The notes under the pieces were generated by a model. The model saw only the letters and a list, made by a program, of their open reading frames with translations. It was not told the origin of the DNA and searched no databases. The position numbers and the translations under genes were made by a program. Positions 35,713-57,250 of a DNA stretch of 64,000 nt are shown in pieces (positions within the stretch are counted from its first letter, which is position 1; the number at the start of each line of letters is the position of its first letter). Location: the IMG/VR virus record IMGVR_UViG_3300028558_000791, positions 1 to 64,000 of that record; one strand, given 5' to 3'.

Positions 35713-35787
35713 GCGCAACTCGACGACATCGGCATGTTTCGTTTCAATTTGTTGGGACTATTTCCCAAATATGGAAGGTGTATTATT

Positions 35788-37419
35788 ATGTCAAACAAGA
35801 ACTTATTCTCAAACAAGAACAAGCTAACGGTATCTGTTTCTAAGAAGGTAACTCTGCCAACCAACACGGTTAATGAGGCAGGTGGAACTGCATATAAGCT
35901 GTCCGACAAGGCTGCTTTGGCGCAGTACGCCATGACTGGTACGTTCAACGGTACATACTATGCATCCGATGCAGATCAACTTAAGAAGGTCCTTGAGTTG
36001 GCAAACAAGGTAGATCCAAAGTTCGTCGCTAAGCTGGCAGTGTACGCACGCCAGAGAGGCTTGATGAAGGATATGCCTGCCGTTCTTGCAGCCGTCATTG
36101 CTGGAAGAGACGCTGACCTATTGGCTACGATTTTCGATAGAGTAATCGACAATCCAAAGATGCTTCGTAACTTCGTTCAGATCATCCGATCTGGCGCAAC
36201 TGGCCGTAAGTCCTTGGGAACTCGCCCAAAGAAGTTGGTACAGAAGTATCTTGAGAACTTGACCGACGAGCAGTTGTTCAAGGCTGATGTTGGTAACGAT
36301 CCGTCGTTGCAGGACATCATCAAGTTGGTTCACCCAAAGCCAACTAACAAGCAGCGTTCTGCGTTGTACGGTTACTTGCTCGACAAGGAGTACAACAAGA
36401 GAGACCTCGTGTCTTTGGCACAACAGTTCGAAGCATTCAAGAAGGATATGAAGGGAGAGATCCCAGATGTTCCGTTCCAGATGTTGACGGCTCTGCCATT
36501 GACTGATACGCACTGGAAGCAGATTGCTGAGAATGCAACCTGGAACCAGATCCGTATGAACCTCAATACGTTTGCTCGTCACAACGTATTGGCTGACAAG
36601 AAGCTGGTCGATGTTTTGGCAGCAAAGCTATCGGACCCAGAGCAGGTCAAGCGTTCCAAGACGTTCCCATATCAGTTGTTCACCACTTACTTGAACGTGG
36701 ACGCCACGATTCCAAGCAAGCTGACGAACGCATTGCAAGATGCGGCTGATTCTTCTTTGGATAACATTCCTGAGTTCCCAGGAAAGGTCTTCGTAATGGT
36801 TGACACTTCTGGTTCTATGGGCTCTGCCGTCACCGGTAAGAGAGTAAATCCAAAGACTGGTAAGGAGGAATCCTTTACGACTAAGGCTCGATGCGTAGAC
36901 GTGGCAGCACTTTTCGCAGCAGCAATCTTGCGCAAGAATCCAGACACTGAGATTGTGCCATTCGACACCTCAGTACATGTTGGTCACCGATTCAATCCAC
37001 GTGATTCGATCATGACCAATGCAAAGACTCTAGCTTCATTCGGTGGTGGTGGTACCAACTGCTCCGCTGCTTTGGAGTATGTCAACAAAAAGGCTGGCAA
37101 GGGCGACCTTGTCATCTACGTGTCTGACAATGAGTCATGGGTTGATACGAAGGCATCTAACTCAGGTGTGTTCGGATACTACCGCCGTAATGGCACTGCC
37201 ACTATGGAAGAGTGGAATAAGTTCGCAGCCCGTAACAAGGGTGCAAAGCTTGTCTGTATCGACATTCAACCAAACTCCTCCACCCAAGCACACGACAGGG
37301 ATGACATCCTGAACGTGGGAGGATTCAGTGACCAGGTGTTCGATGTAATCGCAAGATTCGCCGAGCTTGGAAACAACAAGGATCTCTGGATCAAGACGAT
37401 CGAAGACGTCAAACTCTAA
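35788..37419 (+). CDS. rsr: Ro60 / TROVE domain RNA-binding protein (Rsr) with vWA domain
   Basis: NEAGGTAY, TGTFNGTYY, LVHPKP, RMNLNTFARH, MIDAS VDTSGSM, GGGTNCS, VSDNESW. Confidence 0.93.
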   Translation: MSNKNLFSNKNKLTVSVSKKVTLPTNTVNEAGGTAYKLSDKAALAQYAMTGTFNGTYYASDADQLKKVLELANKVDPKFVAKLAVYARQRGLMKDMPAVLAAVIAGRDADLLATIFDRVIDNPKMLRNFVQIIRSGATGRKSLGTRPKKLVQKYLENLTDEQLFKADVGNDPSLQDIIKLVHPKPTNKQRSALYGYLLDKEYNKRDLVSLAQQFEAFKKDMKGEIPDVPFQMLTALPLTDTHWKQIAENATWNQIRMNLNTFARHNVLADKKLVDVLAAKLSDPEQVKRSKTFPYQLFTTYLNVDATIPSKLTNALQDAADSSLDNIPEFPGKVFVMVDTSGSMGSAVTGKRVNPKTGKEESFTTKARCVDVAALFAAAILRKNPDTEIVPFDTSVHVGHRFNPRDSIMTNAKTLASFGGGGTNCSAALEYVNKKAGKGDLVIYVSDNESWVDTKASNSGVFGYYRRNGTATMEEWNKFAARNKGAKLVCIDIQPNSSTQAHDRDDILNVGGFSDQVFDVIARFAELGNNKDLWIKTIEDVKL

Positions 37420-37911: not shown

Positions 37912-38753
37912 TTAAGCGAAATGGCGTAGAGGTAATGAACGCCCGCACTAAAAACGTCTCTATTGCCAAAGAAACAATCGCTATAATCAACAACCAAAAA
38001 TACACCAATCTCAATGGAGATACAGTAGATATCTCAGTAGAAATGGATGCGGCCATAGACGGCACTCATTACTATGAGGCTGACGTTTTAGTCGGCATGC
38101 CCGCCGATCAGGCTCCCATTCACGCTACGATTGAGGTAGTAAATGAGACTACTGCTCAAGCTGCTGTTCGATTGCAAGCTAAAGGAAAAACTAATCTAGT
38201 TGCCCTTAACTTCGCTTCAGCGCGTAATCAAGGTGGAGGCTTTCTTTCTGGAGCTTTGGCTCAAGAAGAAGACTTGTGTAGGGCTTCTGGCCTATATGGT
38301 TGCCTGAAACGCAAACCATTGTTCTACAATGCAAACATCCTGTGTGACGATGCATTCTATACAAATGGAGTTCTCTACTCACCTAACGTTCCGTTCTTTA
38401 GGGATGATCATAATCTGTTTTTAGAGAAGCCTTTTCCGCTTTCTATCGTCTCAGCACCAGCTCCTAACCTTTCTAGCACCAAGTCGAACATCGACCCTAA
38501 AGTATTAACCTCTCTTATTAGAGAGCGTACTGTTAGGATTCTACAGGTGGCTCATGCCAATGGGCATAAGAACATCATTTTAGGTGCCTGGGGCTGTGGA
38601 GCCTTCGGAAATGATCCTGAAATGGTATCAAAAGCATTTATGTTGGCCCTAACTAAAGTTCCATATTTCGAGCATGTAACCTTTGCGGTATATGATACCA
38701 GAGAGCCGTACGTTTTATATGAAACGTTCAAAGAAGTCTGTAACGCTGTATAG
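37908..38753 (+). CDS. TIGR02452/DUF2263 bacterial-type poly(ADP-ribose) glycohydrolase
   Basis: LNFASA..GGGF..GALAQEEDLCRAS, LGAWGCGAFGN. Confidence 0.9.
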   Translation: MIKRNGVEVMNARTKNVSIAKETIAIINNQKYTNLNGDTVDISVEMDAAIDGTHYYEADVLVGMPADQAPIHATIEVVNETTAQAAVRLQAKGKTNLVALNFASARNQGGGFLSGALAQEEDLCRASGLYGCLKRKPLFYNANILCDDAFYTNGVLYSPNVPFFRDDHNLFLEKPFPLSIVSAPAPNLSSTKSNIDPKVLTSLIRERTVRILQVAHANGHKNIILGAWGCGAFGNDPEMVSKAFMLALTKVPYFEHVTFAVYDTREPYVLYETFKEVCNAV

Positions 38754-40807: not shown

Positions 40808-41416
40808 ATGACTAAAGCATTATATGTTGGTAGTTTCGACCCTATCACCAACGGTCATATTGATATTATGAAGCGTAGCTTACAGTTCTGTAAGCAACTG
40901 GTGATTGGGATAGGTATCAATCCTAACAAGACTACTATGTTTGATGAGCGGGAGAGGAACTCCATGATTTTTCAAACGATAGTGAAGGAGTTTGACTTCC
41001 TTCATTCAACCAATACTTCGGTTGCTTCTTTTCAGGGACTTACAGTAGAGTATGCTAAAGAAATTGGTGCAACGATTCTAATTCGCGGAATTAGATCCGT
41101 TTCTGATTTCGAATATGAAATTAATTTGGCCAACATCAACAAGGTTCTGGCCCCATCAATTGAAACAATTTTCCTGCCCACCAGTCCTGATCTGGCGGTT
41201 GTCTCCTCTTCAATGGTAAAAGAAATTGCAAAGTTGAACGGAGATATTTCAAGATTCGTACCCAGCTATATTGCCGAGAGGATTCATTCAAAATTCGGTT
41301 TCTTCAAGCATGGCAAGACAGAGATTGGCACTGATACTATCAATAGATTACGAGAAGCTACAGTAGCTATTGAGAAAGAATTGGGAATCAAACCAAAAGA
41401 TGAGGGCGAAAAATAA
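40808..41416 (+). CDS. coaD: Phosphopantetheine adenylyltransferase
   Basis: GSFDPITNGH, IRGIRSVSDFEYE, VSSSMVKEIA. Confidence 0.92.
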   Translation: MTKALYVGSFDPITNGHIDIMKRSLQFCKQLVIGIGINPNKTTMFDERERNSMIFQTIVKEFDFLHSTNTSVASFQGLTVEYAKEIGATILIRGIRSVSDFEYEINLANINKVLAPSIETIFLPTSPDLAVVSSSMVKEIAKLNGDISRFVPSYIAERIHSKFGFFKHGKTEIGTDTINRLREATVAIEKELGIKPKDEGEK

Positions 41417-41430
41417 AAATTAGCGACGGG

Positions 41431-41458
41431 TTGACGAGCTAATTTTTAAGACTACAAT
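41431..41458 (+). promoter_or_regulatory. sigma70-like promoter of the RNA cluster
   Basis: TTGACG-N16-TACAAT. Confidence 0.55.
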
Positions 41459-41561
41459 GTTCGTTACTTCGGAGGCGCAAACCAAAGAATAATCAAAAAA
41501 GAATAGTGTGATAAAAATCTAGGCATAGCGTGATATAATACATACGATTCACCATTTTCAT

Positions 41562-41644
41562 GGGGGAGTAGCTCAGCGAAAGAGCGCAAGGATACCGTAA
41601 GGAAAACCTTGAGGTCCCTGGTTCAATTCCAGGCTCCCCCACCA
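41562..41644 (+). ncRNA. tRNA-like RNA with 15-nt anticodon loop
   Basis: Intact acceptor, D and T arms plus ACCA; CAAGG-ATACCGTAAGGAAAA-CCTTG. Confidence 0.85.
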
Positions 41645-41708
41645 TTTCAGTAGTTGTCTGAAAGTTTACCAAAGCATTAGCCTGGTATTACAATCAAAAC
41701 AACATTAT

Positions 41709-41784
41709 GGGACTGTAGCTCAGTGTTAGAGCGTCGGATTAAAAACCCGAAGGTCGCAGGTTCAACTCCTCGCCAGTCCCACCA
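41709..41784 (+). tRNA. Atypical tRNA, anticodon AAA (Phe)
   Basis: GGGACTG/CAGTCCC plus ACCA; loop TTAAAAA; bulged T stem. Confidence 0.7.
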
Positions 41785-41790
41785 TCTAAT

Positions 41791-41877
41791 CCCTCGTAAT
41801 TGGATCCGTGGGAGGATCTCCGGTCTGTAAAACCGGCGCCAATGTGCTAGGTAGTTCGATTCTACTGCGGGGGACCA
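41791..41877 (+). tRNA. 8/4-fold tRNA (allo-tRNA/Sec-like), anticodon GTA
   Basis: 8-bp acceptor CCCTCGTA/TGCGGGGG, 4-bp T stem, 6-bp D stem, CCGGT-CTGTAAA-ACCGG. Confidence 0.75.
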
Positions 41878-41967
41878 AACTGTAAGAGGAGCTTCGGCTC
41901 CAGTATTTATGCGGTACAAACCAACTAAGTATTTACAGTCTGTTCAATGACAACTTAATATTTGTTT

Positions 41968-42044
41968 CGGGGACTGGCTCAACCTGGTAGAGCGTCTGTT
42001 TTGGGTACAGAAGGTTGCGAGTTCAAATCTCGCGTCCCCGACCA
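41968..42044 (+). tRNA. tRNA-Pro(TGG)
   Basis: Canonical cloverleaf, C1-G72, A73. Confidence 0.95.
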
Positions 42045-42047
42045 TAT

Positions 42048-42081
42048 CCTTCTTTTTGGGTTAAACCGAAGAGAGGGGCCA
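42048..42081 (+). ncRNA. Minihelix: 12-bp hairpin plus G-CCA
   Basis: CCTTCTTTTTGG-GTTAAA-CCGAAGAGAGGG-G-CCA. Confidence 0.6.
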
Positions 42082-42084
42082 TAA

Positions 42085-42159
42085 GCCTCTGTAGCTCAAG
42101 AAACAGAGCGTCGTCCGTTGAGGACGATGATGTAGGTGTAAAGCCTACTGGAGGCTCCA
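42085..42159 (+). tRNA. Atypical tRNA (loop CG-TTG-AG, T-loop TGTAAAG)
   Basis: All four stems pair; G33; T-CCA end. Confidence 0.7.
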
Positions 42160-42168
42160 TGTTACTAT

Positions 42169-42245
42169 GCCACTACTAGCTCAATTGGTTAGAGCACTGG
42201 ATTGTGGATCCGGGGGTTTCGGTTCGATTCCGAAGTTTGGTACCA
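42169..42245 (+). tRNA. tRNA-His(GTG)-like, imperfect acceptor
   Basis: CTGGA-TTGTGGA-TCCGG; lacks C73. Confidence 0.75.
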
Positions 42246-42353
42246 TGACGAATGTCCGAGTAGGATTACATTTTTATGCAAAAAAACCGATGGGGTTCGA
42301 TTCCCCTTTAGGGCTGGCGCCAGGCAAAACATCTTATTCATTTCTTGTCGTCA
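42246..42353 (+). ncRNA. Y RNA-like 1 (T-arm cargo)
   Basis: TGACGA-ATG..GAGTAGGAT-TACA / ATCTTATTC..TTG-TCGTCA; internal GGGG-TTCGATT-CCCC. Confidence 0.8.
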
Positions 42354-42355
42354 AT

Positions 42356-42432
42356 CAGAGAATGTTGTTTAATGGTTAGCATCCGTGCCCTGGAAGCATG
42401 TGGTCCCGGTTCGAATCCGGGTTCTCTGACCA
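42356..42432 (+). tRNA. tRNA-Pro(TGG), atypical loop
   Basis: CAGAGAA/TTCTCTG plus ACCA; CGTGC-CCTGGAA-GCATG. Confidence 0.75.
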
Positions 42433-42503
42433 ATGCCAGTATATCTGGAAACTAATGAAGAACATTATTGGTAGTTCTGTTCTCGATGAAGTTTCTTGCT
42501 GGT

Positions 42504-42619
42504 CATACCGAATGAGCTTTAAGAGCTACTCAGTCTTAATAAATAAGTGCATGGGATAGCTACCTTAAAAATAACCGTTATAGTTAAGGCTCATAAGGAA
42601 ACACAATTTTGTCGGTATG
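42504..42619 (+). ncRNA. Y RNA-like 2 (divergent)
   Basis: CATACCGA-ATG / TTTTG-TCGGTATG; second helix GAGCTTTAA/TTAAGGCTC; lacks GGATTACA. Confidence 0.6.
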
Positions 42620-42623
42620 TTTT

Positions 42624-42724
42624 TGGGATACATTAAGTTGGTAATCATTACGATTCTGGTTCGAGTGGTAGGAACACAAATCGGAAACGTAAGTGAGAAG
42701 GTTCGAATCCTTCTGTCCTGACCA
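42624..42724 (+). ncRNA. tRNA-like RNA with long replaced anticodon arm
   Basis: TGGGATA/TGTCCTG plus ACCA; GAAGG-TTCGAAT-CCTTC; arm TTAC-GATT..AATC..GTAA. Confidence 0.7.
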
Positions 42725-42727
42725 AAT

Positions 42728-42801
42728 GACTTTGTGGACAAATTATTAAGTCACTCCCGTTAGAGGGAGAGATGTAAGTGCAAGGCTTGCCAAGGTCACC
42801 A
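42728..42801 (+). ncRNA. tRNA-like RNA with 6-nt anticodon loop (GTTAGA)
   Basis: GACTTTG/CAAGGTC plus ACCA; CTCCC/GGGAG; T-loop TGCAAGG. Confidence 0.7.
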
Positions 42802-42802
42802 T

Positions 42803-43019
42803 GTAACAAATGCCCCGAGAGGATTACATTCATTAGGAGAACGAGGTCGTGGGTCCGAGTCCCACCACTGCTACCATCCCAAAGCACGTCATTAAATTGA
42901 AGGGACACTCGAAAGAGTGATGTTGCCTGACTTACTTAGCGAAAGCTATCTAAGTCCTCATAGCAGTGTAGCTCAGTTGGCAGAGCGCGAAAAACATCTT
43001 TTCAAATTTTTGTTGTTAC
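42803..43019 (+). ncRNA. Y RNA-like 3 containing a circularly permuted tRNA with internal CCA
   Basis: GTAACAA-ATG..GAGAGGAT-TACA / ATCTTTTC..TTG-TTGTTAC; T arm plus CACTGCT-A-CCA precedes AGCAGTG plus D arm. Confidence 0.85.
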
Positions 43020-43022
43020 TAT

Positions 43023-43056
43023 CTCCGCTGTAGGGTCAAACCTAAAGCGGGGACCA
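43023..43056 (+). ncRNA. Minihelix: 12-position hairpin plus A-CCA
   Basis: CTCCGCTGTAGG-GTCAAA-CCTAAAGCGGGG-A-CCA. Confidence 0.6.
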
Positions 43057-43348
43057 AAAGACCAATCGTATCGGTCTTTATGAGAGAGATACATTCCTCT
43101 CAAAAGCATCTAGTGGTCGTCCGTTATCACTGGAGCTAAATAGTTAGCGGGCAGTATTCAGGGTTTGCTCCAGCCGAATTATGAATACTATTATTGAGAT
43201 TAAATTTGTTGGGGGCGTATTCGGTTGCGCTTGATATTCCGAAACTCTAATGGGAGTGAATATAGTTCCATTGTAACACTCAGCTATAACGATTAAGTAA
43301 CTCAGAGTGTTGCGCTTTACTAGCAATAACAATGCATAGTATATGTAT

Positions 43349-43422
43349 TCCGAGGTCGTTCAACGGTAGGACGGGTCGCTGTTAACGACTCTATATTGGT
43401 TCGATTCCAGTCCTCGGAGCCA
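43349..43422 (+). tRNA. tRNA-Asn(GTT)
   Basis: Canonical; G73-CCA. Confidence 0.95.
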
Positions 43423-43428
43423 GAATAT

Positions 43429-43515
43429 TCTGTGGTAGCCTAATGGTAAGGCAGGTGGCTGTTAACCACCCGGTGGTAAAACACTTTCTAGGTTCGAGTC
43501 CTAGCTGCAGAGCCA
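43429..43515 (+). tRNA. tRNA-Asn(GTT) with long variable arm
   Basis: GGTGG-CTGTTAA-CCACC; V-arm GGTG-GTAAAA-CACT. Confidence 0.85.
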
Positions 43516-43624
43516 AATAATACGGGGATTGATTAGACCGAAATGATCCGTATTAGCTGTTATGTTTGGTCAATTCTGCATAACGACAGAAGCTATGTCC
43601 AGTAAAATGGAGTCGTCTTCTGAA

Positions 43625-43880
43625 GATGAATGCCGATAAGGATTACACTAATACAACCGAGCCTCACGCCGTAGAATGCCCGCAAGGATTTCATTCCACA
43701 AATACCGGGTGGCTCACATCTCCCACTACATTACAAGAGATGATGAAAATTAAACTGAGATGTCTGACAAGCCTGCCTACCAGTTAGAGTAACAGGCTCA
43801 GTGGTGTAACTGATAATACACTGTGATTACTTGTTTACTTGTAAACAAAATAATTGCTATCTTTATCAACTTTAGTCATC
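43625..43880 (+). ncRNA. Y RNA-like 4 (large unknown cargo)
   Basis: GATGA-ATG..GATAAGGAT-TACA / ATCTTTATC..TAG-TCATC. Confidence 0.7.
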
Positions 43881-43887
43881 AAAATAT

Positions 43888-43962
43888 TCTGCTCTAGTGT
43901 AATTAGCACGGCGATCTCTTTGTAGGTCGAGGGTCATGGTTTAAGTCCATGGGGCGGAGCCA
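43888..43962 (+). ncRNA. tRNA-like RNA (Gln-like T1-A72, G73) with irregular anticodon arm
   Basis: TCTGCTC/GGGCGGA plus GCCA; CGATCT-CTTTGT-AGGTCG. Confidence 0.65.
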
Positions 43963-43982
43963 AAGCAAATCATGAGAAAGCA

Positions 43983-44411
43983 ATGTTTACTTCAACCGGA
44001 ATCCTTCAATATGATCCTGGTCAGGGTCTAAAACATTTCGATCCATGGTGGGCTCTTCTAGCCTGTGACGATGAAGTATCTAGGTATTATGCCTGGTTAC
44101 TAAAGAGACACGGAGTAGAAGTCTACCCTAACGATAAAGGGTTGTGGGGAACACACGTTTCAGTTTTGAAAGGTGCCGTCCCTCCCAATCAAGATAAGTG
44201 GGGCAAGTATCAAGACTTCGAAGTAGAAATCCATCTCAATCATCTTGTCCGTTATGATAACGGGAAACATGCTTGGGTAGATGTATACTCAGAAGATTTA
44301 TCAGCAATCCGACAGGAGTTAGGCTTCGATGCCAAGCCCTGGTACCATCTGACAATTGGTAGGTTGGTGAGACCATTTGATGTGGACTTTACCAAATATG
44401 GCATAACCTGA
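43983..44411 (+). CDS. 2H phosphoesterase family protein
   Basis: Two HxS/T motifs (THVSV, YHLTI) about 65 aa apart. Confidence 0.7.
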   Translation: MFTSTGILQYDPGQGLKHFDPWWALLACDDEVSRYYAWLLKRHGVEVYPNDKGLWGTHVSVLKGAVPPNQDKWGKYQDFEVEIHLNHLVRYDNGKHAWVDVYSEDLSAIRQELGFDAKPWYHLTIGRLVRPFDVDFTKYGIT

Positions 44412-44427
44412 TATATAATCAGCACAT

Positions 44428-44502
44428 ACCCTCGTACGCATCGGGTGAGGCGGGAAGCTTGTCAAGCTTTTGAGGGCGGTTCGAGTCCGCTCGGGGGTGC
44501 CA
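44428..44502 (+). tRNA. tRNA-Asp(GTC)
   Basis: GAAGC-TTGTCAA-GCTTT; G73-CCA. Confidence 0.85.
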
Positions 44503-44569
44503 AAGTCAAATGCCTTGATAGGATTACATTTTACCAAAAGAAAACATCTTATCTACTTTTTGTTGACTT
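44503..44569 (+). ncRNA. Y RNA-like 5 (minimal, stem only)
   Basis: AAGTCAA-ATG..GATAGGAT-TACA / AAAC-ATCTTATC..TTG-TTGACTT. Confidence 0.8.
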
Positions 44570-44572
44570 TTT

Positions 44573-44666
44573 CGATCACGCGTAGCTGGTTGCTCGGGCG
44601 AGACTTATAATCTTGCAAGGACTGATATTCCGTAACGGCAGGGTTCGATTCCCTGGTGATCGACCA
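44573..44666 (+). tRNA. Atypical tRNA-Ile(TAT), 6-bp anticodon stem, long variable region
   Basis: CGATCAC/GTGATCG plus ACCA; GCGAGA-CTTATAA-TCTTGC. Confidence 0.75.
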
Positions 44667-44669
44667 TAT

Positions 44670-44746
44670 GGCACTGTAGCCCAAAGGCAGGAGGCACCTG
44701 ACTTAAAATCAGTTCAGTGTGGGTTCAAATCCCACCAGTGCTACCA
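44670..44746 (+). tRNA. tRNA-Leu(TAA) with short variable loop
   Basis: CTGA-CTTAAAA-TCAG; no type II arm. Confidence 0.85.
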
Positions 44747-44765
44747 ATAAAGATATAGTTAATAT

Positions 44766-44841
44766 GGAACTTGAGCAAGTATGGTTATTGCATCGGTCTG
44801 AAAAGCCGACAAACGGGGTTCGATCCCCCGAGGTTCCACCA
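44766..44841 (+). tRNA. tRNA-Phe(GAA)
   Basis: TCGGT-CTGAAAA-GCCGA; ACCA. Confidence 0.9.
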
Positions 44842-44842
44842 A

Positions 44843-45193
44843 ATGAGAATTGTTCAAAAGCCTTGGGGCCATGAAGAAATCTGGGCAGAAACTCCCAACT
44901 ATGTTGGAAAAGTTCTCTCAATCAATCCTGGTCACAGACTCTCAAGACAATATCATAATCTCAAAGAAGAAACATTCAGAGTTCTTTTTGGGACGTTGAC
45001 GCTAGAAATAGGTGAGGGTGACGATATAGTTACTCACGTATTAACGGCAGGTCAAACTTTTCACTGTCCTCCAAAGACAGTTCATAGAATGATTTGCCAA
45101 CGAGTTATCAACTATGCACCAGTAAATGTATTGGAAGTATCAACCAATCATTTAGATGATGTAGTAAGATTAGAAGACGATTATAAAAGATAA
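44843..45193 (+). CDS. Cupin domain protein (mannose-6-phosphate isomerase C-terminal-like)
   Basis: KPWG, LSRQYH..KEE, HR, DDVVRLEDDY. Confidence 0.85.
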   Translation: MRIVQKPWGHEEIWAETPNYVGKVLSINPGHRLSRQYHNLKEETFRVLFGTLTLEIGEGDDIVTHVLTAGQTFHCPPKTVHRMICQRVINYAPVNVLEVSTNHLDDVVRLEDDYKR

Positions 45194-45270
45194 CGTGCTA
45201 TAGCTCAGTTGGTTAGAGTGCCTCTCTGATAAGGAGGAAGTCCCAGGTTCGAATCCCGGTAGCACGACCA
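45194..45270 (+). tRNA. tRNA-Ile(GAT)
   Basis: Canonical cloverleaf. Confidence 0.92.
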
Positions 45271-45481
45271 GTAACGAATGCAGTTAGGATTACATCCATA
45301 ACGACCTTAAAGTAGTTGACAGAGCCGCGAGGCGCTGAATCGATGGCAACAAAACGATCACCAGGTAATGCTGAGGTCCATCAGACTCTTGAGTCGAAGT
45401 TGCGGGGCGAACGGGAAGTATCTCGAAAGAGACTTTCAATGTGCCGGTCACACCCAGTATCTTAGCAATTTTTGTCGTTAT
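45271..45481 (+). ncRNA. Y RNA-like 6 (large unknown cargo)
   Basis: GTAACGA-ATG..GTTAGGAT-TACA / ATCTTAGC..TTG-TCGTTAT. Confidence 0.78.
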
Positions 45482-45485
45482 ACAT

Positions 45486-45561
45486 GGGACGGTAGCTCAG
45501 TGGTTAGAGCGCAACGCTGATAACGTTGAAGTCGATGGTTCGATTCCATCTCGTCCTACCA
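45486..45561 (+). tRNA. tRNA-Ile(GAT)
   Basis: Canonical cloverleaf. Confidence 0.95.
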
Positions 45562-45697
45562 ATGGCAAGCCATTAAAGCCCTTCCTTCTATAATTAATTG
45601 ATAAAACAGGACTTTTGCTTTCTTGCCAGATGATATTACATTTATGGCCCCACGCTTTAGTGGGTCACCATAAATAATAAATGAAGGTCGCACCTTC

Positions 45698-45786
45698 AGC
45701 CTGCCCACATGGATGGAAACTGTGGCGTCACCTTGGTAAACCAAGTAGTAAAGTGACAAGCCTGCCCACATGGTTGGAAACTGTGG
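45698..45786 (+). repeat. 28-nt direct repeat x2 with 33-nt hairpin spacer
   Basis: AGCCTGCCCACATGGWTGGAAACTGTGG at 45698 and 45759. Confidence 0.85.
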
Positions 45787-45789
45787 AAA

Positions 45790-45866
45790 GAATCGTTTAG
45801 CTCAATGGTAGAGCGTGGTCACTAGTGACGACTAAGATGCGGGTTCGATTCCCGTAATGATTCCCA
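45790..45866 (+). ncRNA. His-like tRNA (G-1:C73) with 9-nt anticodon loop
   Basis: GAATCGTT/AATGATTC-CCA; TGGTC-ACTAGTGAC-GACTA. Confidence 0.75.
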
Positions 45867-45894
45867 AGGGGACAACATTGTTGCTCCCTCAATC

Positions 45895-46048
45895 GAGGCA
45901 AATGCACCGAAGGTTTACATTTGGAATAATCATATCGTCGTAAGACGGTCGCAGGTTCGAATCCTGCAACTTCCGAAAGGAAGTTTGGCTGAGTGGTCTA
46001 AAGCAATGATGCTGAAAAGCATGCTAACTTTCAAATTTTTGTTGCTTC
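45895..46048 (+). ncRNA. yrlA: Y RNA-like 7, classical YrlA architecture
   Basis: GAGGCAA-ATG / TTG-TTGCTTC; T arm GCAGG-TTCGAAT-CCTGC, acceptor AACTTCC-GAAA-GGAAGTT, then D arm. Confidence 0.85.
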
Positions 46049-46050
46049 AT

Positions 46051-46179
46051 CTCCCGCTAGTTTAAAACGAAACACTTGTTATAGAGGACGTATACTTAAT
46101 CTATGATGAGCAAGTAGTAGAGCAAAACACCTCCACGCTAAGGAGGAGATTGCGAGTGCAAGTCTCGCAAGGGAGACCA
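46051..46179 (+). ncRNA. tRNA-like RNA with ~50-nt hairpin inserted in the D loop
   Basis: CTCCC/GGGAG plus ACCA; CCTCC-ACGCTAA-GGAGG; GCGAG-TGCAAGT-CTCGC. Confidence 0.7.
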
Positions 46180-46184
46180 AGGGT

Positions 46185-46511
46185 ATGAACCAAGACAAGC
46201 CGACAATGAAGGACCTGAAAGAAGGTCCGCCATTACTTTGTCCTATCTGTGATAGACCAAACTACTTCCCTTCAGACCATCACATGGTTCCGAAGTCAAG
46301 AGGCGGCAAGTCTACTGAAACGATCTGTGAAGATTGCCACAAAGCAATCCATGCACACTTCACCAATAAAGAATTGGAAGAAACGTATCATACGCCAGAA
46401 GCTTTGTTAGCTCATGAAGGTTTTGCCAAACAGATTAAATTTCTATCGAAACAAGATCCCGGCGGCAGATCGAAAACTAAAAAGAATAAAGATCGTCTAA
46501 GACGAGAATAA
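46185..46511 (+). CDS. HNH endonuclease
   Basis: CPIC, DHHMVPKSRGG, CEDCHKAIH. Confidence 0.85.
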   Translation: MNQDKPTMKDLKEGPPLLCPICDRPNYFPSDHHMVPKSRGGKSTETICEDCHKAIHAHFTNKELEETYHTPEALLAHEGFAKQIKFLSKQDPGGRSKTKKNKDRLRRE

Positions 46512-46516
46512 ATTGT

Positions 46517-46595
46517 GGTGCTATCGTATTTGTGGCCTTCAAGACTGCCCGCTGAAAACGGGACAAAATGAGTTCGATTCTCATTGGCACCACCA
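46517..46595 (+). tRNA. tRNA-Phe(GAA), weak D arm
   Basis: CCCG-CTGAAAA-CGGG; GGTGCTA/TGGCACC plus ACCA. Confidence 0.8.
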
Positions 46596-46664
46596 GCTAA
46601 TCGCGTGATATATCCTGTGTAACCAAGCGTGAGCCCCCGAGGCCACGATCGAAAAGGCGGTAAT

Positions 46665-47276
46665 ATGGGACAAGTAATTCTAGCGAAATGCGTTGTAACA
46701 ACAGAAGAAGATTGGGTTCCAGTTGTATTAGAGGATGACCTCGAAACCTTAGCTGTACAGCAAGGTATTCTACAAGAGAATCAATCTAAAGCGCGAAGAC
46801 TAAACGATAGAGCAATCAATAAAGATCCCGAAGCTAGTCTTAGGAACACGATCTTTTCTAAGCGCTCTGAGTATGCAGTACATCAGTACTTCGATAAAGT
46901 TCCCCGAGTTACTTTACCCGGAGAGTTTCATGACTGGCCAGATGTTGGTCAGGCGAATGTTAGATTCATCGGTGATGCAGCCGATGGCTTAATGATACAA
47001 GATAGAGACCAGGGCGAACTGCCCATGATACTAACTACAACCAAGGACTTGACATTTCAAGACCGAACGATATGGTTAATCGGTTGGGGTCTCACAGATC
47101 AATTACGACGTAATTTTTATCTAATCAACCAGTTCCGAGAGAATAAGAATTGGGGTAGAATGGGCGGAGACTTTGAGGACCATGAGCAATTCATTTATCC
47201 TCGCTCGATGCTGACTCCGATGAAATGGTTTAGCAAAGAAACCATGAACGTACCATATATCAATAAAAAGAAATAA
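46665..47276 (+). CDS. Hypothetical protein, related to 50396-50908 (possible PD-(D/E)xK-like fold)
   Basis: E-x-A..., DVG..VR..L....D pattern shared. Confidence 0.5.
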   Translation: MGQVILAKCVVTTEEDWVPVVLEDDLETLAVQQGILQENQSKARRLNDRAINKDPEASLRNTIFSKRSEYAVHQYFDKVPRVTLPGEFHDWPDVGQANVRFIGDAADGLMIQDRDQGELPMILTTTKDLTFQDRTIWLIGWGLTDQLRRNFYLINQFRENKNWGRMGGDFEDHEQFIYPRSMLTPMKWFSKETMNVPYINKKK

Positions 47277-47323
47277 TACTTAGTGGTGCAACCTCAGCCA
47301 CTCTAATTAGCGATGAGGTTCAT

Positions 47324-47398
47324 GGGGCTATGATGTTAATGGTAGCATAGTTGACTCTTAATCAATCCGTCTGAGTTCGATCCTCAGTGGCCCTACCA
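47324..47398 (+). tRNA. tRNA-Lys(CTT)
   Basis: GTTGA-CTCTTAA-TCAAT; ACCA. Confidence 0.92.
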
Positions 47399-47399
47399 A

Positions 47400-47654
47400 A
47401 TGAAAAGATGCAGTGTTTGCAAAAGAAGCGACGTAGAATTCGGCAAGAATAAGAATAAAAAAGATGGCCTACAAGTTCAATGTAAGATTTGTCAGGCACA
47501 AACTTCTGCAAAACATTATCTTTGTAATAAAGAAAAACAGTTAGAAAGAATTTACGAACGCCGTAATCAGTTAAGGCAATCAATCTTTGATTATTTCAAA
47601 GAGCATCCTTGTGTTGATTGTGGCGAGACTGATCCAATAGTTTTAGAGTATAAT
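47400..47654 (+). pseudogene. Truncated HNH endonuclease
   Basis: CSVC..CKIC..CVDCGETDPIVLE, then runs into a tRNA where the catalytic DH is expected. Confidence 0.6.
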
Positions 47655-47731
47655 GGGTCCATAGTGTTAGCGGAGAGCACCACGGTCTTTTAAACCGTCT
47701 AGGCTGGGTTCGAATCCCAGTGGACCTACCA
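47655..47731 (+). tRNA. tRNA-Lys(TTT)
   Basis: ACGGT-CTTTTAA-ACCGT; ACCA. Confidence 0.92.
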
Positions 47732-47734
47732 CAT

Positions 47735-47899
47735 ATGAGCAAGCTTATTGAGGGTGAGGACTTCTACTACGATGAAAGTGGTAAGATGGTTCTCACCCAA
47801 GCTTTTTTATTGAGGCGTGGTTACTGCTGTAACTACAGGTGCAAACATTGTCCGTATAAGAAGGTCCCCGATGGAAAAGATAAAGACCACGATAATTAA
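47735..47899 (+). CDS. DUF5522-like Cys-rich small protein (not in ORF track)
   Basis: Hand translation: EGEDFYY...LLRRGYCCNYRCKHCPY. Confidence 0.75.
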   Translation: MSKLIEGEDFYYDESGKMVLTQAFLLRRGYCCNYRCKHCPYKKVPDGKDKDHDN

Positions 47900-48428
47900 C
47901 CTGTACGGCGGGCCTGGTGCTGGTAAATCTACCTCAGCCGCTTATTTGTATTATCTATTGAAGTGTCAACAAGAAAATGTTGAACTTGTTCGTGAGTATG
48001 TCAAGAACTGGGCCTGGGAAGGTCGAGCGTTCAATGTCTACGATGAACTTTACTTCTTAGGTAAACAGGTTCGACATGAGAGTATGTTGTTCGGCAAAGT
48101 GAAATATATCGTGACTGATGCTCCCGTCTATATGACAGCTTATTATGCCGGCATCTATTGCAGTCAAGGTCTTGCGCAAGGCGTTGAGAAAGCTGCTACG
48201 GCGTTCTATCAGCAAGCCAAGGACGATGGCCACAATCACCTCCACGTCTATTTAAAGCGTCACAGGCCCTATCAGGCTGAGGGGCGTTACCAGTCCGAGA
48301 CTGAAGCGTTGTCCGTTGACTCTGGTGTCTTGGAAATGTTATCTAGACTAGATGTTCCAGTTCTTCATGCCTCACCTGAAGAGGAAGACATGAAGCGAGT
48401 GCTGGAGTTGATTCAGAAAGACGCATAA
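47871..48428 (+). CDS. P-loop ATPase/kinase (NadR/AAA_28-like)
   Basis: INLYGGPGAGKST, ELVREYVK..AWE, IVTD, GRYQ. Confidence 0.8.
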   Translation: MEKIKTTIINLYGGPGAGKSTSAAYLYYLLKCQQENVELVREYVKNWAWEGRAFNVYDELYFLGKQVRHESMLFGKVKYIVTDAPVYMTAYYAGIYCSQGLAQGVEKAATAFYQQAKDDGHNHLHVYLKRHRPYQAEGRYQSETEALSVDSGVLEMLSRLDVPVLHASPEEEDMKRVLELIQKDA

Positions 48429-48429
48429 C

Positions 48430-48843
48430 ATGATTGAAACATTCAAAGACCTTGTGGGTGATGACGCAAAGACGCCCGAAGATATCGATGCAAAACTCAA
48501 AGAGAAGCTTGGTATCGGACTAGATGCAATGGCTGGTGCCCTATGTGACTCTCTCAAGAATAAAGCGGAAGAGGTTGCCGAAGATTGTTTTAGTATTGCT
48601 CCCTACGGAGACTATTCTAAAATGATTGAAGACAAAGCAGAGATGGTTAAGTTCCTCCGAGAGGAGGCGTCTAAGCCAGAACATTGGAAGCTAGACTTCT
48701 TGGAAGTCAAGAAGAAGGAAGATAAACTAATCGAGTTCATCTTCGTAAATTCATCCGTTGATGATGGAGACATTCTCAAAGGATTCGTCTTCGTTGGATT
48801 CAGCGGCATTATCCGTCATGCCTTCGCCCAAATTCACACATGA
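48430..48843 (+). CDS. Hypothetical protein
   Basis: Packed ORF. Confidence 0.55.
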   Translation: MIETFKDLVGDDAKTPEDIDAKLKEKLGIGLDAMAGALCDSLKNKAEEVAEDCFSIAPYGDYSKMIEDKAEMVKFLREEASKPEHWKLDFLEVKKKEDKLIEFIFVNSSVDDGDILKGFVFVGFSGIIRHAFAQIHT

Positions 48844-49070
48844 AAATAATTCTATTATGTTTATGCCTCGTTGGTTGTAACGAGGAATCTAGAGAGGGTT
48901 TTAGGAAAGAAGTTTTCCCAACTGTTCATGAAGAGGCCCAGCGCATTACCTATGTGAAGGATACGAGAACAAATCTATGCTTCGTAAGGAATTCAGTACT
49001 TACGGATGTCAATAGTGTTGTTTTCACCAATGTTCCTTGTACGCCAGAGGTAGAGAAATTGATTAGATGA
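48840..49070 (+). CDS. Small lipoprotein
   Basis: LVGC lipobox. Confidence 0.6.
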   Translation: MKIILLCLCLVGCNEESREGFRKEVFPTVHEEAQRITYVKDTRTNLCFVRNSVLTDVNSVVFTNVPCTPEVEKLIR

Positions 49071-50072: not shown

Positions 50073-50149
50073 GGGTCTTTTGATGTAAAGGCTGGCCTCT
50101 AGACTTTAGTGCTAGAGGACATCGGGTTCGACTCCCGAATGATCCGCCA
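50073..50149 (+). ncRNA. tRNA-like RNA, no D stem, loop CT-TTA-GT
   Basis: GGGTC/GATCC plus GCCA; CCTCTAG/CTAGAGG; TCGGG-TTCGACT-CCCGA. Confidence 0.65.
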
Positions 50150-56566: not shown

Positions 56567-56898
56567 ACATGAGCTTAGCTTGGTCAAAGGATATGGAATT
56601 GGATCCTGGTACGTTTGGAGGTTCTCCGGCATGCCATGTTTTAGTAGATATGATGAATCACAATGTTATTCCTATTATAGAGAAGCATCGTGTTTTATCA
56701 TTCATCAATGATGCTATCTATCAATTCAAGTGGTTATCCACTGTGAAGGAGTATGGCGTCAAGGAGAGGTCTATGGTTCTGATGAGGGACGATATTCTAT
56801 CTAGGGTGGATCATATGCCATATCCTGCCAAGTTTAATTCACATCTGAAGAACGTGATAACTCACCACTTCAGACGATACTTGAAAGAAGAGACCTAG
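56563..56898 (+). CDS. Hypothetical protein
   Basis: Packed ORF. Confidence 0.5.
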   Translation: MNMSLAWSKDMELDPGTFGGSPACHVLVDMMNHNVIPIIEKHRVLSFINDAIYQFKWLSTVKEYGVKERSMVLMRDDILSRVDHMPYPAKFNSHLKNVITHHFRRYLKEET

Positions 56899-57250
56899 AC
56901 AATCGCTCCCGTAAGGAGAGGAAAGTCGGAGCTACGTAGGGCAATTTGCTGGCTAACGGCCAGGCGCAGTGATGCGACAGATAGTGCAACAGAAAAGAAA
57001 CCGCCATGAATCCGCCAGGCCCGAAAGGGAGCAACGGTAGATGGTAAGGGTGAAATGGTGGGGTAAGAGCCCACCGCACCTATAGTGATATAGGTGGCAA
57101 GGTAAACCTCAGATGTAGCAAGCTAAATAGAGAGTGACTTGTCCGGTCAATACTCTCGGGTTAGTGCTGGAGCCATTAGGTAACTAACGGCCAAGATTAA
57201 TGATTGTCTCGATTTATAGACAGGACTCCGCTTATAGGGTGTCTTCTTTC
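56883..57250 (+). ncRNA. rnpB: RNase P RNA, bacterial type A
   Basis: GAGGAAAGTCGGAG, AGTGCAACAGAAA, GGGTGAAA..GGTAAGAG, GGTAAACC, ACAGGACTCCGCTTA; P1 GAAAGAAGA/TCTTCTTTC. Confidence 0.93.

What the first reader, a model, noticed from the sequence alone, without database searches (positions are those of the whole stretch)
45895..46048. Textbook YrlA topology anchors the Y RNA assignment
Seen: T arm (GCAGG-TTCGAAT-CCTGC), then a 7-bp acceptor-like stem closed by GAAA (AACTTCC/GGAAGTT), then a D arm (GCT-GAGTGGTCTAA-AGC), all inside the shared terminal stem, with a variable-arm hairpin CGTC-GTAA-GACG. Known: T arm, then closed acceptor, then D arm is the defining YrlA order. This supports treating the six siblings as Y RNAs.
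Basis: partly seen in the sequence, partly recalled or inferred. Interest (0 to 1): 0.65.

Follow-up and report, generated by a model that had tools for sequence, protein, structure and literature searches.

The report
Phage Y RNA with tRNA-like core
This 154-base element is very likely a Y RNA of the YrlA type, a small RNA with a handle for the Ro60 protein and a tRNA-shaped core; it is one of at least seven such RNAs scattered among the tRNA genes of a 480-kb soil phage that also encodes Ro60.

Summary
At 45895-46048 a 7-bp terminal stem encloses a variable-arm hairpin, a T arm, a 7-bp stem closed by GAAA, and a D arm.

Rfam's YrlA model gives 24.2 bits (cut-off 69), and a plain tRNA dimer in the window scores 23.2.

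What supports it:
- **Ro60 gene:** the window is the start of a 480,838-bp phage record with a Ro60 (TROVE plus Ro60-vWA) gene at 35734-37419 on the same strand.
- **Shared handle:** seven units share stem 1 carrying a GNC(G/A)AAUG motif, an AUGC loop, stem 2 and UUAC. Curated-score YrlAs next to Ro60 in related phages have the same handle.
- **Leave-one-out model:** a covariance model built only from relatives finds the target at exactly these coordinates (36.5 bits, E about 1e-8). tRNA dimers score 22.9 bits or less.
- **Covariation:** in four orthologs 186 of 190 pair cells hold, and 26 of 38 positions change on both sides. The Levitt pair switches from G15:C48 to A15:U48.

The core mimics a class II tRNA. 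The kind is known, including in phages. The class II core, the seven-member array among tRNA genes and the failure of the Rfam model are variant features. Expression and Ro60 binding are untested.

The parts
35734..37419 (+). Ro60 (Rsr) ortholog, 561 aa: the presumed protein partner of the Y RNAs
   Evidence: Pfam TROVE 37 bits (cut-off 23) and vWA_Ro60 52.1 bits (cut-off 27.7). Nearest solved structures are Thermus phage phiLo Ro60 (9KOP/9L5Y, E 3.4e-12) and D. radiodurans Rsr (2NVO, E 9.2e-9).
45895..46048 (+). The target unit (S6): complete YrlA-type Y RNA candidate, 154 nt
   Evidence: Leave-one-genome-out model R1: 36.5 bits, E 1.7e-8, full length. Parsed. Fold energy.
45895..45901 (+). 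Stem 1, 5' strand (GAGGCAA). With the next three bases it includes GGCAAAUG (45897-45904), a one-substitution variant of the YrlA motif GNCGAA(N0-1)G.
   Evidence: Pairs with 46042-46048. Motif definition from PMC4201824. The G-to-A change is matched by C-to-U on the 3' strand.
45902..45908 (+). 5' side of the internal loop (AUGCACC). AUGC is conserved in all units and in the Rfam YrlA consensus.
45909..45915 (+). Stem 2, 5' strand (GAAGGUU), followed by UUAC/UACAU (the YUAY element)
   Evidence: Pairs with 46026-46032 over 7 bp. The other units have AGGAU/AUCUU where the target has AGGUU/AACUU.
45929..45933 (+). Anticodon-stem analogue, 5' strand (AUCAU)
   Evidence: Pairs with 46006-46010. 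All 5 positions change on both sides among the orthologs.
45936..45947 (+). Variable-arm hairpin CGUC-GUAA-GACG
   Evidence: All 4 pairs covary among the orthologs.
45950..45950 (+). Position 48 analogue (C), Levitt partner of G15 at 45993
   Evidence: G15:C48 in the target and A15:U48 in four orthologs.
45951..45967 (+). T arm GCAGG-UUCGAAU-CCUGC
   Evidence: The T54-psi55-C56-R57-A58 letters and G53:C61 are kept.
45968..45985 (+). Acceptor-like 7-bp stem closed by GAAA (AACUUCC/GGAAGUU), with no CCA
   Evidence: All 7 pairs change on both sides among the orthologs. No N-CCA after the 3' strand.
45986..46004 (+). U8-G9 followed by a class II type D arm (3-bp stem GCU/AGC, 11-nt loop with A14 and G18G19)
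   Evidence: With the permutation undone, the best matches are the phage's tRNA-Ser genes.
46006..46010 (+). Anticodon-stem analogue, 3' strand (AUGAU)
46011..46025 (+). 3' junction with a small hairpin (GC-UGAAAA-GC). Orthologs have GUC-GAAA-GAC or GCC-GAAA-GGC here.
46026..46048 (+). Stem 2 3' strand (AACUUUC), U-rich loop AAAUUUUUG, stem 1 3' strand (UUGCUUC)
42245..42354 (+). Sibling S1: same handle (GACGAAUG), core with a T arm only. It abuts the CCA end of the upstream tRNA and ends 1-2 nt before tRNA-Pro.
   Evidence: R1 27.8 bits. R2 42.0 bits, E 8.4e-8..
42803..43019 (+). Sibling S2: same handle, with a permuted class I tRNA-like core: T arm, 3' acceptor strand plus A-CCA, an ~85-nt insert, 5' acceptor strand, D arm
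   Evidence: R1 83.1 bits, E 2.3e-22. Orthologs in L122 and L127 keep the A-CCA.
43625..43880 (+). Sibling S3: same handle (GAUGAAUG, with compensatory CAUC), and a ~200-nt core of unknown fold
   Evidence: Motif-plus-complementarity detector. Orthologs in L122, L123, L144 and L189. No Rfam family. Not seen by R1 or R2.
44503..44569 (+). Sibling S4: minimal unit, the handle alone, lying exactly between tRNA-Asp and tRNA-Ile
   Evidence: R2 57.9 bits, E 1e-11..
45271..45481 (+). Sibling S5: same handle (AACGAAUG), a ~150-nt core that is not tRNA-like, lying exactly between two tRNA-Ile genes
   Evidence: Detector. Orthologs in L123 and L144. No Rfam family. R2 sees only its 5' half.
45791..45866 (+). 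tRNA-Thr(AGU), 28 nt upstream of the target
56887..57250 (+). Phage-encoded bacterial class A RNase P RNA (context: possible processing enzyme for the array)
   Evidence: Rfam RF00010, 272.5 bits against a cut-off of 100.
41431..41458 (+). Best sigma-70-like promoter match at the head of the tRNA/Y RNA array (consensus match only)
   Evidence: TTGACG-16-TACAAT, 10 of 12. The count of such sites is not above the shuffles.

Best explanation
The element at 45895-46048 is a gene for a Y RNA of the YrlA type, encoded by a 480-kb phage that also encodes the Y RNA-binding protein Ro60. The RNA has two modules. The outer module is shared by all seven paralogs: a terminal stem carrying GNC(G/A)AAUG, an asymmetric internal loop with AUGC on the 5' side and a U-rich stretch ending in UUG on the 3' side, a second stem, and then UUAC. 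It corresponds to the Ro60-binding handle of known YrlA RNAs. The inner module of this copy is a circularly permuted class II tRNA look-alike: anticodon-stem analogue, long variable arm, T arm, a 7-bp acceptor-like stem capped by a GAAA tetraloop with no CCA, and a 3-bp D stem. It keeps the letters needed for the D-loop/T-loop elbow and the 15:48 Levitt pair, so it should fold into a tRNA-like L shape. Inferred mechanism: the RNA is transcribed with the surrounding tRNA genes and trimmed to the base of stem 1. Phage Ro60 binds the handle. The tRNA-like core then acts either as a nuclease-resistant cap or as the docking site for a tRNA-recognising or RNA-degrading partner. This is by analogy with the Ro60/Y RNA/PNPase complexes of Deinococcus, Salmonella and Thermus phage phiLo. 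The result would be a retargeting of RNA quality control or decay during infection. Shown here: the sequence anatomy, conservation and covariation of the structure, homology of the handle to curated-score YrlAs, and linkage to Ro60. Inferred, not shown: expression, the RNA ends, Ro60 binding and the partner.
For: (1) Ro60 gene on the same strand at 35734-37419. (2) Seven units share one module. Stem 1 and stem 2 pair in every copy, with changes on both sides. (3) On a MAFFT alignment of 26 minimal units from other phages, not fitted to any structure, stem 1 pairs in 95.5% of cells and 5 of 6 pairs change on both sides. The covariation score is 0.516 against 0.224 for shuffles (0 of 500 reach it) and at most 0.207 when slid. 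(4) Related contigs with Ro60 54-55% identical carry Rfam YrlA hits above the curated cut-off (79.5, 79.2 and 70.0 bits against 69) within about 1.2 kb downstream of Ro60, and these have the same handle layout. (5) Model R1 was built from five relatives, two of them curated-score YrlAs, and holds no sequence from this genome. It hits the target full length at 36.5 bits, E 1.7e-8, while tRNA dimers reach at most 22.9 bits. It finds 146 matches in 78 Ro60-linked loci, 145 of them on the Ro60 strand. (6) Orthologs of the target in L123, L130, L137 and L189 keep every helix: 186 of 190 cells are paired, 26 of 38 positions change on both sides, and register shifts give 36-49%. (7) U8, A14, G18G19, A21 and the UUCGA T loop are kept, and the Levitt pair covaries, G15:C48 against A15:U48, as Chen et al. 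describe for YrlA. (8) The proposed fold is within 1.1 kcal/mol of the MFE. (9) In the more distant relatives the units sit 300-700 nt downstream of Ro60, the classic YrlA arrangement.
Against: Rfam RF02553 scores the target at 24.2 bits, far below the gathering score of 69 and no better than a tRNA dimer. The 5' motif is GGCAAAUG, not an exact GNCGAA(N0-1)G. The gene lies 8.5 kb from Ro60, not within the 4 kb seen for most published YrlAs. Unlike five of its siblings, the target does not abut a tRNA (28 nt upstream spacer, no tRNA directly downstream), so how its ends form is unclear. No RNA data exist for this phage, so transcription, processing, modification and Ro60 binding are all untested. 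The helix boundaries in the four orthologs were set by eye, which inflates the paired percentage somewhat. Only about four independent lineages support the core. E-values from the home-built models are rough.
Confidence: 0.82

Rival explanations
1. The units are tRNA-like decoys or processing elements of the tRNA array and work without Ro60. For example, they could be baits for host tRNA-cleaving defence nucleases or spacers that guide RNase P/RNase Z processing, with the shared outer stem being only a structural clamp.
For: Five of seven units abut tRNA ends. The phage carries 57 tRNAs, its own RNase P RNA and two CCA-adding-type enzymes. The function of the tRNA-like module of YrlA is itself unknown.
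Against: The shared module is the handle of curated-score YrlAs found next to Ro60. Units were found in loci chosen only because they encode Ro60, and 145 of 146 lie on the Ro60 strand. Minimal units such as S4 have no tRNA-like part at all, yet they keep the handle with strong covariation, which a tRNA decoy role does not explain.
Confidence: 0.1
2. It is a decayed remnant, a tRNA dimer or rearranged tRNA-Ser pseudogene, that happens to resemble YrlA and has no function.
For: The Rfam YrlA model scores real tRNA dimers as high as the target. Chen et al. warn of this artefact. The core is most similar to the phage's own tRNA-Ser genes.
Against: The acceptor-like stem is a closed hairpin with a 4-nt loop, not two tRNAs. 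No tRNA is called there. Orthologs in four other phages keep all seven helices through 26 positions changed on both sides, and the Levitt pair covaries, which means purifying selection on the structure.
Confidence: 0.03
3. It is a circularly permuted tRNA gene, as in the red alga Cyanidioschyzon merolae, or a piece of a two-piece permuted tmRNA, and matures into a working tRNA or tmRNA.
For: The 3' half of a tRNA precedes the 5' half. Sibling S2 even encodes A-CCA after the 3' acceptor strand.
Against: The target has no CCA, no discriminator base and no anticodon loop: the anticodon-stem analogue runs into the handle. ARAGORN calls no tmRNA. The Rfam permuted-tmRNA model gives only one weak hit elsewhere, at 44814-44871 (24.6 bits against 47). 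This is my own knowledge, not tested here: bacteria and phages are not known to have the splicing endonuclease pathway that matures permuted tRNAs.
Confidence: 0.02

Closest known systems
YrlA RNAs of Salmonella Typhimurium, Mycobacterium smegmatis and mycobacteriophages (Chen et al. 2014, PMC4201824; Rfam RF02553)
   Same: Terminal stem with a GNCGAA(N)G-type motif, AUGC internal loop, second stem, YUAY, then V arm, T arm, closed acceptor-like stem and D arm. tRNA tertiary letters and 15:48 covariation. Same strand as Ro60. A 7-bp acceptor-like stem, as in M. smegmatis YrlA.
   Different: Scores only 24.2 bits with RF02553. The motif has A for G at position 4. The D arm is class II type (3-bp stem, 11-nt loop) rather than the class I type GCUC/GAGC of the consensus. 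There is an extra 13/15-nt internal loop with a small 3' hairpin between stem 2 and the anticodon-stem analogue. It lies 8.5 kb from Ro60, inside a tRNA array, and is one of seven paralogs.
Yrl1 and Yrl2 of Thermus phage phiLo with its Ro60 (PMC12135203)
   Same: Phage-encoded Ro60 (the nearest solved structure to this one) with more than one phage-encoded Y RNA-like partner carrying a CGAA-type motif. That system forms a RYPER-like complex with host PNPase, which is the model for the mechanism proposed here.
   Different: As described in the passages read, the phiLo RNAs are stem-bulge-stem RNAs upstream of Ro60. No tRNA-like core or tRNA-array setting is reported there. The Ro60 proteins are only about 23% identical.
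Deinococcus radiodurans Yrn1 and the Ro60/Y RNA/PNPase complex
   Same: A Y RNA that tethers Ro60 to an effector. It has a T arm-like element.
   Different: According to Chen et al., Yrn1 has the opposite orientation of its T and D elements, both strands of the metazoan-type Ro60 helix, and an independent origin.
Circularly permuted tRNA genes (Cyanidioschyzon merolae) and two-piece permuted tmRNA genes; comparison from my own knowledge
   Same: The 3' half of a tRNA-like fold is encoded before the 5' half.
   Different: Those mature into functional tRNA or tmRNA with free acceptor ends. Here the acceptor-like stem is capped and there is no anticodon loop or tag reading frame.

Membership tests
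YrlA-type Y RNA (as defined by Chen et al. 2014) | GNCGAA(N0-1)G motif near the 5' end | tested here: inconclusive
   The target has GGCAAAUG at 45897-45904, one substitution (G to A), compensated by C to U in the 3' strand. Siblings S1 and S7 and orthologs L189 and L144 have an exact GACGAAUG.
YrlA-type Y RNA (as defined by Chen et al. 2014) | Stem-loops in the order V, T, AS (closed acceptor-like stem), D, enclosed by the terminal stem | tested here: met
   Conserved with compensatory changes in four orthologs.
YrlA-type Y RNA (as defined by Chen et al. 2014) | tRNA-like conserved letters and tertiary pairs, including 15:48 as either G:C or A:U | tested here: met
   U8, A14, G18G19, A21 and UUCGA are present. 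G15:C48 in the target and A15:U48 in four orthologs.
YrlA-type Y RNA (as defined by Chen et al. 2014) | Conserved YUAY after the second stem | tested here: met
   UUAC at 45915-45918. The following UACA is invariant in the 26 minimal units.
YrlA-type Y RNA (as defined by Chen et al. 2014) | Encoded on the same strand as a Ro60 ortholog | tested here: met
   Ro60 at 35734-37419 on the + strand.
YrlA-type Y RNA (as defined by Chen et al. 2014) | Within about 4 kb of Ro60 (an empirical regularity, not a definition) | tested here: not met
   The target is 8.5 kb from Ro60 and the nearest sibling, S1, is 4.8 kb away. In more distant relatives the units lie 0.3-0.7 kb downstream.
Rfam RF02553 (YrlA) as currently modelled | Score at or above the curated gathering score of 69 bits | tested here: not met
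   24.2 bits. I therefore do not file it under RF02553 as modelled. It is linked to it through relatives' YrlAs that do pass (70.0-79.5 bits) and share the handle.
Y RNA in general | Bound by Ro60 in vivo | not testable with these tools
   Needs immunoprecipitation or a gel-shift assay.
YrlA-type Y RNA | tRNA-type modifications (pseudouridine 55, dihydrouridine) | not testable with these tools
   Needs RNA from infected cells. No RNA runs hold this phage.
Permuted tRNA gene | Anticodon loop, discriminator base and a free or encoded CCA end | tested here: not met
   None of these is present in the target.

The most novel reading that the evidence does not exclude
The phage keeps a modular library of Ro60 adaptor RNAs. 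One covarying Ro60 handle is fused to at least five different cores: a class II tRNA mimic (the target), a permuted class I tRNA with encoded CCA, a T arm only, nothing, and two conserved cores of unknown fold. Most of them lie flush between tRNA genes, so tRNA-processing enzymes, perhaps including the phage's own RNase P, would cut them out. Each adaptor would direct Ro60 to a different partner or substrate, or act as a decoy for a different tRNA-targeting host defence.
Probability: 0.3. Interest if true: 0.75.

Novelty: new variant of a known kind. Interest (0 to 1): 0.5.

Why it matters
Y RNAs and Ro60 are conserved from bacteria to humans, where Ro60 is a lupus and Sjogren autoantigen. What the tRNA-like module of bacterial Y RNAs does is still an open question. 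This phage group offers a natural experiment: one Ro60, one constant handle and many different cores, with enough sequence diversity to read structure from covariation. The group includes a cultured member, Myxococcus phage Mx1, where two such units lie unannotated or mis-annotated among its tRNA genes. The finding also shows that the curated YrlA model misses a whole phage subfamily, so Y RNAs are probably under-counted in large phage genomes.

Tried and rejected
- **Rfam at gathering threshold:** no YrlA or Y RNA hit in the window. In E-value mode the target scores 24.2 bits, no better than a tRNA dimer. I rejected this score as evidence in either direction.
- **Megablast of 41000-49000 against cultured phages:** no match.
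- **Short 5' pattern in viral contigs:** more than 118 single hits, almost all chance. Not used.
- **Two loose regex detectors:** flooded with false hits. Replaced by a strict one whose strand bias, 106 against 7, shows its specificity.
- **MAFFT alignments A2 and A5 of long units:** both misplace the closed stem, so I did not count pairs on them. I parsed helices by segment lengths instead. This is partly fitted by eye, and I say so.
- **Module-only model R2:** cannot span units with long cores, so S3, S5, S6 and S7 are invisible to it.
- **Expression:** no RNA run holds this phage. Read laying was not used, because DNA contigs cannot show RNA ends.
- **RtcB:** absent from the genome, so this is not an rsr-yrlBA-rtcBA type repair operon.
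- **S3 and S5 cores:** no Rfam family.
- **Literature:** two review papers were not held and the supplements of Chen 2014 are not held. I therefore could not check how many Y RNAs were reported per phage, for example in Bacillus phage G.
- **Rejected hypotheses:** permuted tRNA gene, two-piece tmRNA, and tRNA-dimer remnant (see the rival explanations).
- **Not used:** the large protein searches, structure prediction and complex prediction were not needed. No genetic code other than table 11 was used.

Full report
**1. The observation.** I parsed it into segments whose lengths were checked against the sequence.
- Stem 1: GAGGCAA 45895-45901 pairs with TTGCTTC 46042-46048.
- Variable-arm hairpin: CGTC-GTAA-GACG at 45936-45947.
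- T arm: GCAGG-TTCGAAT-CCTGC at 45951-45967.
- Closed stem: AACTTCC-GAAA-GGAAGTT, 7 bp, at 45968-45985.
- D arm: GCT-GAGTGGTCTAA-AGC at 45988-46004.

- a second helix, GAAGGTT 45909-45915 with AACTTTC 46026-46032;
- a UUAC directly after it;
- a 5-bp analogue of the anticodon stem, ATCAT 45929-45933 with ATGAT 46006-46010.

The unconstrained minimum-energy fold of the unit contains stem 1, stem 2 and the V, T and closed-stem hairpins. The complete proposed fold costs only 1.1 kcal/mol more than the minimum, -43.7 against -44.8.

**2. The setting.** The window is the first 64 kb of a 480,838-bp virus record. The same genome appears as a 498-kb rhizosphere metagenome contig.
- The window holds 29 tRNA genes by ARAGORN, all on the + strand, and a bacterial class A RNase P RNA at 56887-57250 with 272.5 bits. 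The whole phage has 57 tRNAs.
- At 35734-37419 on the same strand lies a 561-aa Ro60 ortholog. It scores above the curated cut-offs for TROVE and for the Ro60-type vWA domain.
- Its closest solved relatives are the Ro60 of Thermus phage phiLo and Rsr of Deinococcus.
- The phage has no RtcB but has two genes of the CCA-adding/poly(A) polymerase family.

**3. The siblings.** Six units in the window and a seventh at genome position 76353-76472 share one outer module. It has four parts:
- a terminal stem of 5-8 bp whose 5' strand runs into the motif GNC(G/A)AAUG;
- an internal loop with AUGC on the 5' side and a U-rich stretch ending in UUG or UAG on the 3' side;
- a second stem of 7-9 bp rich in G-U pairs;
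- UUAC directly after it.

The cores differ sharply:

| Unit | Core |
|---|---|
| S1, S7 | T arm only |
| S2 | permuted class I tRNA: 3' acceptor strand, A-CCA, ~85-nt insert, 5' acceptor strand, D arm |
| S4 | none |
| S3, S5 | 150-200 nt matching no Rfam family |
| Target (S6) | full V, T, closed-stem and D set |

Five of the seven units start 0-1 nt after the CCA end of a tRNA, and four end 1-4 nt before the next tRNA. The target is an exception: 28 nt separate it from tRNA-Thr, and no tRNA follows it directly.

Rfam's YrlA model gives the target 24.2 bits against a gathering score of 69. Over the whole genome it gives a plain tRNA-Asn dimer 23.2 bits, and it gives hits at this level in 13 of 14 control genomes. 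Chen et al. warned of exactly this dimer artefact. So the weak Rfam score counts neither for nor against the assignment.

**5. The link to certified YrlAs.** Searching with the Ro60 protein found more than 70 related loci in viral and metagenome contigs, many from phages of 266-498 kb.
- A strict detector requires the 5' motif, the 3' motif, a complementary stem 1 and at least 6 of 7 pairs in stem 2. It found 106 units on the Ro60 strand and 7 on the other strand.
- In the more distant relatives the units sit 300-700 nt downstream of Ro60.
- Three such contigs (L156, L159, L190) carry Rfam YrlA hits above the curated cut-off, at 70.0, 79.5 and 79.2 bits.
- Those certified YrlAs have the same handle layout as the window's units.

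**6. Leave-one-out model.** I built model R1 from five relatives, two of them certified, using a hand-set structure of stem 1, stem 2 and the T, AS and D arms. No sequence from this genome was used.

| Search with R1 | Result |
|---|---|
| 78 Ro60-linked loci | 146 matches, 145 on the Ro60 strand |
| Window, S2 | 83.1 bits |
| Window, target | 45895-46048 full length, 36.5 bits, E 1.7e-8 |
| Window, S1 | 27.8 bits |
| Whole genome, target | E 1.3e-7 |
| Whole genome, S7 | 28.1 bits |
| tRNA dimers | 20.8-22.9 bits |

The tool states that these E-values are rough. The margin of about 14 bits over the decoys is the safer measure.

**7. Covariation in the handle.** Twenty-six minimal units from other phages align well with MAFFT without any structural fitting.
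- Stem 1 pairs in 95.5% of cells, and five of its six pairs change on both sides. One position, for example, has CG in 14 rows and UA in 12.
- The covariation score is 0.516. Shuffles give 0.224 (0 of 500 reach the observed value), and slid registers give at most 0.207.
- Stem 2 looks weaker there (59.6% paired) because MAFFT's gap placement shifts its inner pairs by one column in some rows. In the copy-by-copy parse it pairs in every unit.
- Model R2, built from these units, finds S4 at 57.9 bits and S1 at 42.0 bits in the window. It cannot span the long-core units.

**8. Covariation in the target's core.** Orthologs of the target exist in L123, L130, L137, L189 and L144. For the first four I parsed the same 27 segments.
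- 186 of 190 pair cells are standard pairs, and 26 of 38 helix positions change on both sides. That includes all 7 pairs of the closed stem, all 5 of the anticodon-stem analogue and all 4 of the V stem.
- Shifting the register by 1-3 nt drops pairing to 36-49%.
- U8, A14, G18G19, A21 and the UUCGA of the T loop are kept.
- The Levitt pair is G15:C48 in the target and A15:U48 in all four orthologs. These are the two alternatives that Chen et al. report for YrlA.

Two caveats apply. L130 and L137 are near-identical, so there are about four independent lineages. I also set the helix boundaries by eye.

**9. The kind of tRNA mimicked.** With the permutation undone, the target's core matches the phage's tRNA-Ser genes best, and its orthologs match tRNA-Leu. 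The 3-bp D stem, long D loop and V hairpin fit a class II tRNA. The canonical YrlA consensus has a class I type 4-bp D stem. The target also has an extra 13/15-nt internal loop with a small 3' hairpin between stem 2 and the anticodon-stem analogue. The acceptor-like stem is capped by a GAAA tetraloop and has no CCA. By contrast, at least 8 of 46 parsed units in relatives encode N-CCA at that place, and S2 encodes A-CCA.

**10. Mechanism.** The anatomy, the selection on structure, the homology of the handle and the link to Ro60 are shown. The rest is inferred.
- The RNA is probably co-transcribed with the tRNA array. The best promoter-like site is at 41431-41458, and the scan listed no + strand terminator-like site next to the units. 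This is weak evidence, because the count of promoter-like sites is not above the shuffles.
- It would be trimmed to the base of stem 1 and bound by phage Ro60 through the handle.
- The tRNA-like core would then act either as a nuclease-resistant cap or as a docking site.
- The nearest worked example is Thermus phage phiLo, where Ro60, two Yrl RNAs and host PNPase form a RYPER-like complex.
- Chen et al. show that a YrlA with a 7-bp acceptor-like stem is cut by RNase P and receives CCA in M. smegmatis. I think this is more likely for S2 than for the GAAA-capped target.

**11. Novelty.** Ro60 with Y RNA-like partners is already known in phages:
- mycobacteriophages, Caulobacter phage CcrColossus, Bacillus phage G and phiLo;
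- TROVE proteins in a subset of jumbo phages.

So the kind is known. The variant features are:
- the class II type core;
- a score far below the curated model's cut-off;
- expansion to seven paralogs with one handle and different cores;
- their placement flush between tRNA genes.

I found no description of such interleaved arrays in the papers held. Two reviews and the supplements of Chen 2014 were not available.

The closest cultured phage, Myxococcus phage Mx1 (Ro60 51.8% identical), has two full-length R1 hits among its tRNA genes, at 50.6 and 35.3 bits. One is unannotated. The other overlaps a 40-aa 'hypothetical protein'. That gives a laboratory system for the tests listed under next steps.

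**12. Verdict.** I put the probability that this is a Ro60-associated YrlA-type Y RNA at about 0.8. It is a divergent variant of a known kind and of moderate interest.

Noticed in passing
window 56887-57250 (+): The phage encodes a complete bacterial class A RNase P RNA (272.5 bits against a cut-off of 100). This is notable for a virus and may bear on processing of its 57 tRNAs and the Y RNA units. I did not search for an RNase P protein gene.
   Followed up: no
window 42803-43019 (+); L122 16157-16297; L127 15827-15986: Sibling S2 and its orthologs are permuted class I tRNA look-alikes. They encode a discriminator A plus CCA right after the 3' acceptor strand, then an insert of 11-85 nt before the 5' strand. 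This suggests cleavage into a two-piece RNA with a tRNA-like CCA end.
   Followed up: partly
window 43625-43880 and 45271-45481 (+): Siblings S3 and S5 carry the Ro60 handle around cores of 150-200 nt that match no Rfam family but are conserved in related phages (L122, L123, L144, L189). Their folds and roles are unknown.
   Followed up: partly
window 50073-50149 (+); whole genome: ARAGORN calls a tRNA with anticodon UUA, which would read the TAA stop codon, and two tRNAs labelled Pyl elsewhere in the genome. Possible suppressor tRNAs. I did not test for stop-codon recoding and used table 11 throughout.
   Followed up: no
window 34206-35393, 37908-38753, 40808-41416, 47817-48428 (+): Genes around Ro60 and inside the array look related to NAD and ADP-ribose metabolism: nucleoside deoxyribosyltransferase-like plus NUDIX, a microbial PARG, a cytidylyltransferase-like (NMNAT-type) protein, and an AAA_28 kinase-like protein.
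   Followed up: no
window 45698-45725 and 45759-45786 (+): Two copies, 96% identical, of a 28-nt direct repeat lie 61 nt apart between tRNA-Ile and tRNA-Thr, just upstream of the target. Each can form a CCACA/TGTGG hairpin. Unexplained.
   Followed up: no
window 46115-46168 (+), just before the HNH endonuclease ORF 46185-46511: A partial tRNA-like match (anticodon arm and T arm, 22.3 bits, below the cut-off) lies between the target and an HNH endonuclease gene. It may be a tRNA remnant linked to a homing endonuclease.
   Followed up: no
window 54904-55710 (+): An ORF with five copies of a 54-nt unit, mostly at a 66-nt period. I did not translate it. Unrelated to the finding.
   Followed up: no
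L201 1722-1825 = Myxococcus phage Mx1 OR576727.2 45521-45624: A Y RNA-like unit (R1 35.3 bits) starts 3 nt after tRNA-Ile and overlaps the annotated 40-aa 'hypothetical protein' WNM70101.1, which is probably a mis-annotation. A second unit at 45169-45294 (50.6 bits) is unannotated.
   Followed up: partly
L190 8108-8210 (+): A group II intron catalytic domain hit (47.6 bits against a cut-off of 40) lies upstream of Ro60 in one related contig.
   Followed up: no
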